Shown here in pieces: positions 42,104 to 44,601 of a stretch of DNA of 64,000 nt. The notes under the pieces are model-generated. The model was not told where the DNA came from, searched no databases, and was given only the letters and a program-made list of their open reading frames with translations. The stretch comes from Oculina patagonica. Its lineage: Eukaryota. The translations under genes were made by a program, and so were the position numbers. Position 1 is the stretch's first letter; the number at the start of each line of letters is the position of its first letter. Location of the stretch: the NCBI RefSeq assembly GCF_052425735.1, contig NC_135760.1, positions 14,384,001-14,448,000 on the forward strand. The letters run 5' to 3'.

Positions 42104-44601
42104 CCCATCTAAAAAAAAAAAAAACAGTTTATTATCATTGTTATTGGAGCACAATTTCATGGTTGGATACTTATGTCACTTGCATACCAGGCTGCATTTT
42201 ATGCAGGTAACACCAGATCTTCAGCATGGATAAAGGACCTTGGCATTGACTTTATTTAAATACCTTTGGCATACCTTTGGTGTGGTGTGTACACGGTCAT
42301 GCAGCATGGCTTGCACATCGATGATTTGTACTTCAACGGCTTCTTTCTGTTTCACCACTGTTTGAAGGGGGGGGGCACTTTCATAAAAAAATTTCCTGCA
42401 CAGAAAAACGGCTGAAAAAAATCATGCAATGGGAGCCATGGGAAAAAAAAATAAAAAACATCTTGCATAACCTAATGGTGAAAAAAATATCTTGTTGAGA
42501 AAAATTGCCCCCCCTCCCCCCCCCCCAAAAAAAAAAGTAATTTATAATGCTACATCCTTAACCAGAATGATCGTTAGAGATTGTTTGGCAGTCGACCACC
42601 AGCAATCCCTCTTTTCCCAAACTTCTTTAATCAAGAAAGGGGAAAAAGGAGCATGAGGATAAATGAGCTATTCACACAACTGTAGTCATGTTTTGCACTC
42701 AAGAAGGGGCACCCCATCTTTCATGTTTTTGCTTGAGTACCACCCAATACCAACCCCCTCCTCCCATCCCTTAGTCATTGTCCTCATCTTGTAAGCTCGT
42801 ACAAACAATAACAATTATAATTATTGGTGTTGTTACAACAAATTGTATTTCTTTTGTAGGAAAACCTTCTGCTGGAAAATCAACATTCTTCAATGCTGCC
42901 ACTCACCAAAACATGGCTAAGATAGGGGCCCACCCATTTACGACAATTGAGCCAAATATAGGCCAGGCATTCTATTCAATACCATGTCCATGTGCACAGT
43001 GGAGTCACAGATGTCAAGCACGGTACGGTCACAGTGCTCTAGGTGAAAGGTTTGTTCCAGTCTTACTCAAGGATGTGGCTGGTTTAGTACCCGGTGCATG
43101 TGAAGGAAGAGGACGGGGAAATAAGTTTCTGAATGATCTGCTGGATGCTGATGTGCTTGTTCATGTTATTGACCTGTCTGGGCAGACTGATGAAGATGGA
43201 AAACCTACCACAGGTATTTAACACTATTGACTGGATTGATTTGAAATAACCAATCAGCACACTGATTTTATGTTTGGGGGATCGTCAAGTGACTGTGATG
43301 AGGCTCTACTTGATTTGCACTGCAGGGCTTGAAAAGAAGTGCTGTCTAATTGTCTGACAAGGAGATTTTCCTGCAGGGCAAGTAACATTTCTTGCTCACC
43401 AGCCTGATGCGCAAGGGCCTTGGCAAGTCATCTGCTAACTAAATCATACTAAAACGTAAACAAAACAGGCATGCCCTGGCCAAGCAAAATTTGAGAGCTG
43501 CTTGCAGTTCAAGTTTTTTTTCTTGAAAGCCCTGCACTGTCTAAAAAAATAGTGGCTAAAAGAAATTATTTTAACTTGTTGAATTGTACATACTTTGCCA
43601 TCCTTTAGTGAAATGCCTCATTGCTTTTGAAGATATGTTCACTCCTTCCAGGGCTAAAGCTTAAAACCTGAATTACAAACAGTGATTTCTCTCTTTTGTC
43701 ATCAGAGTATGACCCCAGAAGAGATGTGGAGTGGATTCAACAAGAACTTCACAGATGGATTTATGATAACATCATGGACAAATGGGATTCTATTAAAAAG
43801 AAACCATCTAAACTCCGTGACATGTTTACTGGGTACCACACCTCGCAAGCACTGATTCAGCTAGCATTTGACTCCACAGGAATAACAGACGAAAAGCTTC
43901 TCGCTATTCCAAGGATGGAAAAAGCAAAGGCTGAACTTTTGGTGCACAAAATAGTTGATAATTTTTTGCGGCTACGCTTTCCTATTCTGTTAGCTCTCAA
44001 CAAAGTTGATCTTTCTGATGCTGCTGATAATCTAAAGAAGTTTCAAGAACAGTCTAATGACATGATAATGGTCCCAGTTAGCGCAAGAAGTGAGTGTGCT
44101 CTACAACAGAAGTGCAAAGATGGTCTCATATCATACCAAAGTGGAGCATCGCATTTCAATTTTAATGTTCAGCAACAAGATGAAAATGACAGGTCTGACA
44201 AAGAGTTAGCAGATATCAAAGACAACATTCTTGAAGTTTTTGGTGACACTGGTGTTCTGCGAGCCTTGTCACAAGCTGTAAGTCTGCGGTCACCAGTGTA
44301 TGCATTTCCTGTCAGCTGCCTTGACACCTGTCAATCAATCAGTATCGTTACAAATGAGAAACACCAAGTTCTCAGGGACTGTATTGTGTTAAAACCAGGC
44401 ACAACAGTAGGGAAACTTTTTGATATTATGCTTTATCCACCAGTTTCTCTTCTTGCTGGAGAGTATGTAAGAGCAGAAGGGATCAATTCAAATGGAGTGA
44501 AAAGTGTGTTACATAAACATGACCTTGTGAATGAGTCAAACCAGATTATTAAAATTATGAGCACAAAGAAAGCTTCTTCCTCAGCAAAGACAAGAAATTA
44601 A
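41274..44601 (+). CDS. RWD-domain + Ygr210/archaeal YchF-like Obg-family GTPase with C-terminal TGS-like domain, 3 exons: 41274-41772, 42860-43213, 43706-44601; ~582 aa
   Basis: RWD (EEQREEVETLKSIF, EKYPDEIP, GMPMVFGLV); G1 GKPSAGKS, G2 PFTTIEPN, CPC..C insert, G3 [23 protein letters not shown], G4 NKVD, G5 VSA; C-terminal DCIVLKPGTTV...IIKIMST. Confidence 0.9.

What the first reader, a model, noticed from the sequence alone, without database searches (positions are those of the whole stretch)
42860..44601. Ygr210-subfamily (archaea/fungi-type) GTPase in an animal genome
Seen: GKPSAGKSTFFNAAT, PFTTIEPN, a CPC...C insert, [37 protein letters not shown] and a canonical G4 NKVD. Established: this pattern fits yeast Ygr210c and archaeal YchF-like proteins rather than OLA1/YchF (altered G4, ATP preference) or DRG. 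The Ygr210 subfamily has classically been described from archaea and fungi. Inference: either an ancestral gene lost in model animals or a lateral acquisition, since intronised. The intact NKxD suggests GTP specificity.
Basis: partly seen in the sequence, partly recalled or inferred. Interest (0 to 1): 0.7.

Follow-up and report, generated by a model that had tools for sequence, protein, structure and literature searches.

The report
Coral RWD-fused Ygr210-type GTPase gene

Summary
Every quoted motif is present at 42860-44601 on the + strand.

That stretch is only exons 2 and 3. The gene has three exons (41274-41772, 42860-43213, 43706-44601) and encodes 582 aa. Exon 1 encodes an RWD domain plus the first strand and first glycine of the P-loop.

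The GTPase is Ygr210-type:
- Pfam PF08438 scores 85 bits.
- The best solved relative by sequence and by fold is P. horikoshii 1wxq.
- NKVD is intact.
- The genome has separate OLA1 and DRG genes.

Lateral transfer is not supported. The same RWD-GTPase architecture occurs in other anthozoans, molluscs, an annelid, a nemertean, amphioxus and an ascidian; hemichordate hits are partial. An FSH1-RWD-GTPase form occurs in a choanoflagellate, chytrids and many protists.

In my tree the eukaryotic sequences form one clade beside Archaea and split into two paralogues. One is the stand-alone yeast Ygr210c type. The other is an RWD-fused clade (100/100) that holds the coral gene. The coral gene is therefore a sister paralogue of yeast Ygr210c, not its orthologue.

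NCBI already labels the animal copies "YGR210C-like", and no function is published. Likely mechanism (inferred): a GTP-dependent ribosome factor tethered to GCN1 through its RWDD1-like RWD domain.

This scan noted the same stretch twice in this genome, and not on other DNA.

The parts
41274..41772 (+). Exon 1. It holds the ATG, the RWD domain (residues 1 to about 125, ending at 41648, with the YPDEIP motif at 41445-41462), a flexible acidic linker, and the first beta strand of the G domain (WNFVIGLI). Its last base is the first base of the Gly167 codon of the P-loop.
   Evidence: Pfam RWD PF05773 at E 2.6e-21. GT donor at 41773 and the reading frame. The best PDB match is the human RWDD1 RWD domain, 2ebm, at E 6.7e-19.
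41773..42859 (+). Intron 1 (GT...AG, phase 1), rich in poly-A/T runs. 
   Evidence: Splice sites were read. Joining the exons restores FVIGLIG|KPSAGKS.
42860..43213 (+). Exon 2. It holds the rest of G1 (GKPSAGKS, 41772 plus 42860-42882), G2 (PFTTIEPN, 42934-42957), the Cys knuckle (CPC-x6-C-x5-H, 42985-43032) and G3 (DVAGL, 43072-43086).
   Evidence: PDB 1wxq at E 2.5e-27. Motif conservation by clade.
43214..43705 (+). Intron 2 (GT...AG, phase 1).
   Evidence: The junction residues GKPTT|EYD are identical in the intron-less contig L082 of a related coral.
43706..44601 (+). Exon 3. It holds the helical insert (43708-43968), G4 (NKVD, 43999-44010), G5 (VSAR, 44077-44088), a C-terminal beta-rich TGS-like domain (about 44293-44577) and the TAA stop.
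   Evidence: PF08438 at E 4.6e-24. 1wxq at E 7.6e-16. Secondary structure of the orthologue model. Coordinates.

Best explanation
This is an intact, single-copy, three-exon coral gene under purifying selection. It encodes a 582-aa protein with four parts: an N-terminal RWD domain of the RWDD1/Gir2/GCN2 kind, a flexible linker, a Ygr210-type Obg-family G domain with canonical G1-G5 (NKVD, so GTP is expected), and a helical insert followed by a TGS-like C-terminal domain. It was inherited vertically. It belongs to an ancient eukaryotic RWD-fused paralogue of the Ygr210 family, sister to the stand-alone yeast Ygr210c type; both descend from the archaeal Ygr210 gene. I found this paralogue in anthozoans, several lophotrochozoan phyla, hemichordates, amphioxus and an ascidian, but not in vertebrates, arthropods or nematodes. 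Proposed mechanism (inferred, not shown): the protein acts as a single-chain counterpart of the Gir2-Rbg2 (DFRP2-DRG2) pair. The RWD domain would tether the protein to the RWD-binding region of GCN1 on stalled or collided ribosomes. The GTPase and TGS-like module would dock at the ribosomal factor-binding site and use GTP to act on the stalled ribosome, possibly competing with GCN2 for GCN1.
For: Gene model:
- GT-AG introns give an open 1749-nt CDS.
- Exon 2 starts in the middle of the P-loop, so the G domain cannot fold without exon 1.
- The 582-aa product is colinear, without gaps, at 80% identity with P0184, which is encoded without interruption on a 2035-nt contig, L082.
- dN/dS is 0.13 overall, 0.10 for the RWD domain and 0.05 for the N-terminal half of the G domain.
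- PF08438 matches once in the genome. OLA1 and two DRG genes lie elsewhere.

Family:
- Pfam hits, PDB sequence hits and the fold search, where 1wxq has TMt 0.80.
- Protein atlas neighbours are Ygr210 clusters.

Distribution.

Tree:
- Ygr210 against DRG 100/100; eukaryotes 95/95; stand-alone clade 97/96; fused clade 100/100; coral inside cnidarians 100/97.
- The AU test rejects animals grouped with the yeast type, p 0.008.
- Four chytrids carry both paralogues.
- The best prokaryotic matches are Heimdallarchaeota.

Mechanism:
- The RWD family profile hits RWDD1 at 1e-29, GCN2 at 1e-17 and IMPACT at 4e-7.
- The RWD domains of Gir2 and GCN2 bind GCN1, and Gir2 links Rbg2 to GCN1 on the leading stalled ribosome (10.1101/2020.10.31.363135; PMC3510508).
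Against: - No experiment or complex prediction supports GCN1 binding or ribosome binding for any member of this family.
- The protein has no DFRP domain. Ygr210 is a different Obg subfamily from DRG, so the analogy may not carry over.
- Other RWD domains bind other partners, for example RWDD3, which scores 2e-12.
- I could not lay RNA reads for this species. Transcript support comes from a related coral and from an uncertain word share of 0.30-0.41 in runs whose RNA status is only guessed.
- Absence from vertebrates, arthropods and nematodes rests on non-detection among the best 120 hits of two searches.
- OLA1/YchF, Obg and Nog1 were not in the tree.
Confidence: 0.6

Rival explanations
1. The gene was acquired laterally, or is contamination, from an archaeon, a fungus or the coral's dinoflagellate symbiont, and gained introns afterwards.
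For: The family was first described from archaea and fungi. Prokaryotic relatives are all archaeal. Symbiodiniaceae do have a homologue (Durusdinium, Cladocopium).
Against: The gene lies on a chromosome-scale contig between intron-bearing genes, including a PNKP phosphatase exon. Orthologues with the same RWD architecture occur in about seven animal phyla, and the animal sequences form one clade (92/63). Eukaryotes are one clade apart from Archaea (95/95). Symbiont copies are only 33-36% identical to animal orthologues, carry an FSH1 domain and fall in another subclade. Fungal copies of the same clade also carry FSH1.
Confidence: 0.03
2. It is the direct orthologue of yeast YGR210C, and the RWD domain was added within animals.
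For: NCBI names the animal copies 'YGR210C-like' or 'C428.15-like'.
Against: RWD-fused forms occur in a choanoflagellate, an ichthyosporean, chytrids, amoebozoans, euglenozoans, stramenopiles, dinoflagellates and green algae (PMC12711092). The fused clade has 100/100 support with a stem of 0.80. The AU test rejects animals plus stand-alone forms as one clade, p 0.008. Four chytrids have both forms.
Confidence: 0.05
3. The gene and family assignment are as described, but the protein does not work through GCN1. The RWD domain would bind another partner such as an E2-like, SUMO or ubiquitin component, and the GTPase would act in ribosome biogenesis or tRNA or RNA handling, like other Obg-family members.
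For: RWD domains are versatile; the profile also hits RWDD3 and RNF25. Obg, Nog1 and mitochondrial Obg relatives, which are ribosome-assembly factors, appear among the fold matches. Yeast and archaeal Ygr210 proteins work without any RWD domain. Non-animal members add an FSH1 serine hydrolase, which hints at an enzymatic role.
Against: The RWD domain is closest, by a wide margin, to the GCN1-binding group: RWDD1 at 1e-29 and GCN2 at 1e-17. RWDD1/Gir2 is the RWD protein known to partner an Obg-family GTPase.
Confidence: 0.3
4. The RWD exon and the GTPase exons are two neighbouring genes that my model joined wrongly.
For: Intron 1 is 1087 nt long and of low complexity. I could not lay RNA reads for this species.
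Against: Exon 1 ends with the first beta strand and the first base of the P-loop glycine codon, in frame. An uninterrupted 582-codon ORF with the same junction residues exists on L082 from a related coral. More than 30 animal proteins have the same architecture.
Confidence: 0.02

Closest known systems
Pyrococcus horikoshii PH0525 GTP-binding protein (PDB 1wxq), an archaeal Ygr210-subfamily member
   Same: G domain, helical insert, G4-containing domain and C-terminal beta-rich domain. It is the best hit by sequence (E 2.5e-27 and 7.6e-16) and by fold (E 4e-21, TMt 0.80). The archaeal consensus also has a CxC...C...C knuckle.
   Different: It has no RWD domain and no linker. It is about 22% identical in the structural alignment. 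It is archaeal and stand-alone, about 400 aa.
Saccharomyces cerevisiae YGR210C / S. pombe C428.15 type (stand-alone eukaryotic Ygr210, the '45.2 kDa GTP-binding protein')
   Same: Same subfamily, same Pfam pair (PF01926 + PF08438), NKxD and Cys knuckle.
   Different: It is a separate paralogue clade of fungi plus Amoebozoa (97/96), about 410-450 aa, without RWD. The coral gene does not group with it. No yeast or S. pombe sequence itself was in my tree; Tortispora represents the Saccharomycotina.
RWD-MMR_HSR1-YGR210-like_G4 proteins of other animals (e.g. Branchiostoma, Crassostrea, Haliotis, Capitella, Phallusia) and FSH1-RWD-GTPase proteins of protists (e.g. Chlamydomonas Cre12.g538200)
   Same: The animal proteins are orthologues with the same architecture, 41-51% identical over the full length. 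All fall in one clade with 100/100 support.
   Different: Non-animal members carry an extra N-terminal FSH1 serine hydrolase and lack the Cys knuckle. None is functionally characterised.
DRG2-DFRP2 (yeast Rbg2-Gir2; human DRG2-RWDD1) complex
   Same: It combines an Obg-family, TGS-bearing GTPase with an RWDD1-type RWD domain. The RWD domain of the coral protein is closest to that of RWDD1.
   Different: There, two polypeptides are held together by a DFRP domain; here there is one chain and no DFRP domain. The GTPase belongs to a different subfamily (Ygr210, not DRG). The coral also keeps separate DRG genes and a DFRP_C exon.
OLA1 / YchF
   Same: It is the next-best structural relative, with a similar three-part layout of G domain, helical insert and TGS-like domain.
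   Different: The coral protein has NKVD, whereas OLA1/YchF carry an altered G4 (from general knowledge). The coral gene has no PF06071 domain; the genome's PF06071 match lies on another contig. Sequence E-values are about 16-18 orders of magnitude weaker than for 1wxq.

Membership tests
Ygr210 subfamily of Obg-family GTPases | YGR210-like G4-containing domain (Pfam PF08438) above the curated cut-off | tested here: met
   85.4 bits against a cut-off of 24.7, E 4.6e-24. It matches once in the genome.
Ygr210 subfamily of Obg-family GTPases | Canonical G1-G5 motifs, including NKxD | tested here: met
   GKPSAGKS, PFTTI, DVAGL, NKVD and VSA are present and conserved in all four clades.
Ygr210 subfamily of Obg-family GTPases | Closer to a solved Ygr210-type protein than to YchF/OLA1, Obg or DRG | tested here: met
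   By sequence: 1wxq at 2.5e-27 against YchF/OLA1 at 1e-11 or weaker. By fold: 1wxq TMt 0.80 against about 0.6 for YchF and 0.44-0.47 for Rbg1.
Ygr210 subfamily of Obg-family GTPases | Phylogenetic placement with archaeal and eukaryotic Ygr210 sequences, apart from other subfamilies | tested here: met
   100/100 against five DRG sequences, including the coral's own. OLA1, Obg and Nog1 were not in the tree.
Ygr210 subfamily of Obg-family GTPases | C-terminal TGS-like domain | tested here: inconclusive
   The orthologue model has a beta-rich C-terminal domain, and an archaeal Ygr210 cluster carries PF02824 in 95% of members. Pfam TGS did not hit the coral exon at E <= 0.01.
Yeast YGR210C orthogroup (stand-alone type) | Groups with the fungal/amoebozoan stand-alone clade; about 410-450 aa with no extra domain | tested here: not met
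   The coral gene lies in the sister fused clade (100/100). The AU test rejects the joint clade, p 0.008. The protein is 582 aa and has an RWD domain.
RWD-fused Ygr210 paralogue (RWD-MMR_HSR1-YGR210_G4) | N-terminal RWD domain on the same polypeptide, and clade membership | tested here: met
   RWD at E 2.6e-21. The exon join is required for the P-loop. L082 gives an uninterrupted ORF. Clade support is 100/100.
OLA1 / YchF | YchF C-terminal domain PF06071 | tested here: not met
   The Pfam scan of the coral exons shows no PF06071. The genome's PF06071 match lies on contig C11.
OLA1 / YchF | Altered G4 motif | tested here: not met
   The coral motif is the canonical NKVD. That OLA1/YchF have an altered G4 is from general knowledge and was not tested here.
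DRG | MMR_HSR1_Xtn domain PF16897 | tested here: not met
   It is not found in this gene. Two DRG loci lie elsewhere in the genome.
DFRP2 / RWDD1 / Gir2 | RWD domain of the RWDD1 type | tested here: met
   2ebm at E 6.7e-19 with the coral exon alone and 1e-29 with the family profile; 35% identity in the fold alignment.
DFRP2 / RWDD1 / Gir2 | C-terminal DFRP domain that binds a DRG | tested here: not met
   Exon 1 hits only RWD. A weak DFRP_C exon match lies on another contig.
DFRP2 / RWDD1 / Gir2 | Binding of GCN1 through the RWD domain | not testable with these tools
Binding needs a pull-down or a multimer model.

The most novel reading that the evidence does not exclude
RWD-Ygr210 proteins are a third GCN1-tethered ribosome-rescue GTPase system of eukaryotes, a single-chain parallel to DRG1-DFRP1 and DRG2-DFRP2. 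The system would be ancestral to eukaryotes and lost in vertebrates, arthropods and nematodes. It would give the first function to the uncharacterised Ygr210 family. In protists it would bring an FSH1 serine hydrolase to stalled ribosomes.
Probability: 0.35. Interest if true: 0.7.

Novelty: new member of a known kind. Interest (0 to 1): 0.45.

Why it matters
Ygr210 is the only subfamily of the Obg family with no known function. Most animals that keep a member carry it fused to an RWD domain of the kind that binds GCN1. That gives a concrete, testable lead: recruitment to stalled or collided ribosomes. It also shows that a translation-surveillance component may have been lost in the standard animal models. 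For the coral genome itself the finding is ordinary: a vertically inherited, already auto-annotated housekeeping-type gene, not a lateral transfer.

Tried and rejected
- Laying RNA or contig reads on 41100-44800 failed. There is therefore no direct splice evidence for this species.
- Sequencing runs hold 0.30-0.41 of the sampled words of a stretch that is half exon. Their RNA status is only guessed, so this is weak evidence.
- I looked for YchF in five archaeal genomes as an outgroup. The weak PF06071 matches turned out to be the Ygr210 genes themselves, so the tree is rooted on DRG only.
- I asked whether an FSH1 gene sits next to the coral gene, as a sign of gene fission. It does not; the FSH1 matches are on other contigs.
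- Literature searches for YGR210C, SPBC428.15, PH0525/1WXQ, RWD plus MMR_HSR1, and RWD-GTPase fusion found no functional study. The only mention is a passing note in the supplement of PMC12711092.
- I did not try a complex prediction with GCN1.
- I rejected four readings: lateral transfer, symbiont contamination, pseudogene (dN/dS 0.13 with an intact frame), and a mis-joined two-gene model.
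Full report
**Observation.** Pfam scores the two reading frames as MMR_HSR1 (E 7e-15) and as YGR210-like_G4, PF08438 (E 4.6e-24; 85.4 bits against a cut-off of 24.7). Coordinate 42860 is a splice acceptor and 44601 is the end of a TAA stop.

**Gene model.**
- The stretch is exons 2 and 3 of a three-exon gene: 41274-41772, 42860-43213 and 43706-44601. Both introns are GT-AG and phase 1, and the CDS is 1749 nt, or 582 aa.
- Exon 1 was not in this finding. It encodes an RWD domain (PF05773, E 2.6e-21), an acidic linker, the first beta strand of the G domain, and the first base of the Gly167 codon that opens GKPSAGKS.
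- Exon 2 therefore begins in the middle of the P-loop, so the G domain cannot exist without exon 1.
- The model is colinear and gap-free with P0184 (582 aa, 80% identity). P0184 is encoded as one uninterrupted ORF on a 2035-nt contig from another sample (L082), which reads like a transcript assembly. The residues across both junctions are identical.
- dN/dS against that sequence is 0.13 overall, 0.10 for the RWD domain and 0.05 for the N-terminal half of the G domain. All parts are under purifying selection.
- I could not lay reads for this species. I worked beside those places afterwards.
- The share of words held by public runs (0.30-0.41 of a stretch that is half exon) is compatible with RNA but proves nothing.

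**Which GTPase.**
- By sequence, exon 2 hits P. horikoshii 1wxq at 2.5e-27, and YchF/OLA1 only at 1e-11 to 4e-9. Exon 3's only credible hit is 1wxq, at 7.6e-16.
- I modelled the 80%-identical orthologue P0184 with AlphaFold2 (pLDDT 86.8, pTM 0.72). It matches 1wxq best (E 4e-21, TMt 0.80). YchF/OLA1 follow at TMt 0.55-0.61, and then Obg and Rbg1.
- The protein-atlas neighbours are Ygr210 clusters from Archaea and Ascomycota.
- The coral genome has one PF08438 locus. It also has a separate OLA1 locus, two DRG loci and a weak DFRP_C exon match.
- G1, G2, G3, G4 (NKxD) and G5 are conserved across the whole family. Given what is generally known about G4, GTP specificity is a reasonable inference.
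- The 'CPC...C insert' is a CxC-x6-C-x5-H/C knuckle. It is conserved in animals, in stand-alone eukaryotic forms and in Archaea, but is lost in the non-animal fused clade. A metal site is my inference only.

**Distribution.**
- An exhaustive HMMER search with exon 3 found 590 relatives. Most of the closest are 550-1000 aa, with the GTPase at the C-terminus.
- Pfam scans and two word-indexed searches show the RWD-MMR_HSR1-YGR210_G4 architecture (about 520-580 aa) in the following animals:
  - unnamed transcript-type contigs 69-80% identical to the coral model, probably other corals;
  - many molluscs;
  - Capitella;
  - Lineus;
  - four Branchiostoma entries;
  - Phallusia.
- The named cnidarian records (Acropora, Desmophyllum, Nematostella) and the two hemichordates are partial gene models that show only the GTPase part.
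- NCBI already calls several of these proteins 'uncharacterized GTP-binding protein YGR210C-like' or 'C428.15-like'.
- A longer FSH1-RWD-GTPase form (about 750-1000 aa) occurs in Salpingoeca, Ichthyophonus, many chytrids, Plasmodiophora, Tribonema, dinoflagellates including coral symbionts, Entosiphon, Diplonema (where the RWD domain was not detected) and Tetraselmis.
- Mastigamoeba and Chrysoparadoxa have RWD-GTPase without FSH1.
- No vertebrate, arthropod, nematode, echinoderm or sponge protein appeared among the best 120 hits of either search. A 40-50% identical orthologue would have ranked ahead of the protist hits. This is non-detection, not proof of loss.

**Phylogeny.**
- I built a tree of 81 sequences over 409 columns (LG+C20+F+G4 by PMSF, careful search), rooted on five DRG sequences including the coral's own.
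- Support values:
  - Ygr210 against DRG, 100/100;
  - eukaryotes as one clade, 95/95;
  - Archaea, 83/78.
- Within eukaryotes there are two clades:
  - Stand-alone proteins from fungi (chytrids to Ascomycota, including a Saccharomycotina yeast) and Amoebozoa, 97/96.
  - All RWD-fused proteins, 100/100, with a stem of 0.80. Inside it the animals are one group (92/63) and the coral sits within the cnidarians (100/97).
- An AU test rejects a tree that joins the animals with the yeast-type clade (delta lnL 53, p 0.008). One caveat applies: I named the group after seeing the tree.
- Four chytrids (Rhizoclosmatium, Chytriomyces MP71, Physocladia, Obelidium) carry both paralogues.
- All prokaryotic relatives found are archaeal, and the two best are Heimdallarchaeota.
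- Vertical descent from the archaeal ancestor, an early eukaryotic duplication, and loss of the fused copy in several animal lineages fit the data. Lateral transfer or symbiont contamination does not.

**Mechanism.** What is shown:
- the domain layout;
- intact nucleotide-binding motifs;
- purifying selection;
- an RWD domain that belongs to the GCN1-binding group and is closest to RWDD1/DFRP2. The coral exon alone hits 2ebm at 6.7e-19. The family profile hits RWDD1 at 1e-29, GCN2 at 1e-17, RNF25 at 7e-15, RWDD3 at 2e-12 and IMPACT at 4e-7. In the fold alignment the RWD part is 35% identical to 2ebm.

The published background is this. The Gir2 RWD domain is necessary and sufficient to bind GCN1. 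[quoted passage not shown]

What is inferred: the coral protein is a single-chain analogue. The RWD domain would tether it to GCN1 on stalled or collided ribosomes through a flexible linker (pLDDT below 60 at residues 126-155). The Ygr210 GTPase and TGS-like module would act at the factor-binding site using GTP. I put this at about 0.4-0.5. The main rival is that the RWD domain binds a different partner or that the GTPase works in ribosome assembly.

**Novelty and verdict.**
It is an ancestral eukaryotic gene, already auto-annotated in many invertebrates, and not a transfer.
- What appears not to be in the searchable literature is the split of eukaryotic Ygr210 proteins into a stand-alone paralogue and an RWD-fused paralogue, and any function for either.
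- I rate it a new member of a known kind, with moderate interest because the fusion gives a testable lead for an uncharacterised, ancient GTPase family.
- The scan noted the same stretch twice in this genome (s1-291709 and s1-291614). I had already seen the RWD domain, before that look-up.

Noticed in passing
window 45685-45930, minus strand: An exon encoding the end of a polynucleotide kinase 3'-phosphatase domain (Pfam PNK3P, E 4.6e-26). It belongs to a PNKP-like gene convergent with the GTPase gene.
   Followed up: partly
window 40930-41103, minus strand: An open frame starting [17 protein letters not shown], which looks like a mitochondrial presequence, lies head to head with the GTPase gene. 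Its ATG is about 170 bp from the GTPase ATG at 41274, so a bidirectional promoter is possible. It has no Pfam hit.
   Followed up: partly
related proteins P0004, P0013, P0015, P0020, P0026, P0056 and others: Outside animals the RWD-Ygr210 GTPase usually carries an extra N-terminal FSH1/OVCA2-type serine hydrolase domain. A hydrolase attached to a putative ribosome-tethered GTPase is unexplained. In the coral genome the FSH1 matches are on other contigs (C4, C6).
   Followed up: partly
proteins P0035/P0290, P0206/P0287, P0023/P0301, P0037/P0284: Four chytrid fungi encode both the stand-alone Ygr210c-type protein and the fused paralogue, which is direct evidence for two ancient eukaryotic paralogues.
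   Followed up: yes
window 42985-43032 (residues 209-224): The CxC-x6-C-x5-H/C knuckle between G2 and G3 is conserved in animals, stand-alone eukaryotic forms and Archaea, but is deleted in the non-animal FSH1-RWD clade. It may be a metal site.
   Followed up: partly
loci L088 and L089 (the same genes as L002 and L018): The YchF C-terminal model PF06071 gives weak matches to the C-terminus of archaeal Ygr210 proteins. This is in line with a shared TGS-like C-terminal fold between the two subfamilies.
   Followed up: no
locus L092 (G000 contig C2, 21739775-21740089, minus strand): One of the coral's two DRG genes has an uninterrupted open frame of 376 aa, so it appears to lack introns. The other DRG locus, on C3, is split into exons.
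   Followed up: no
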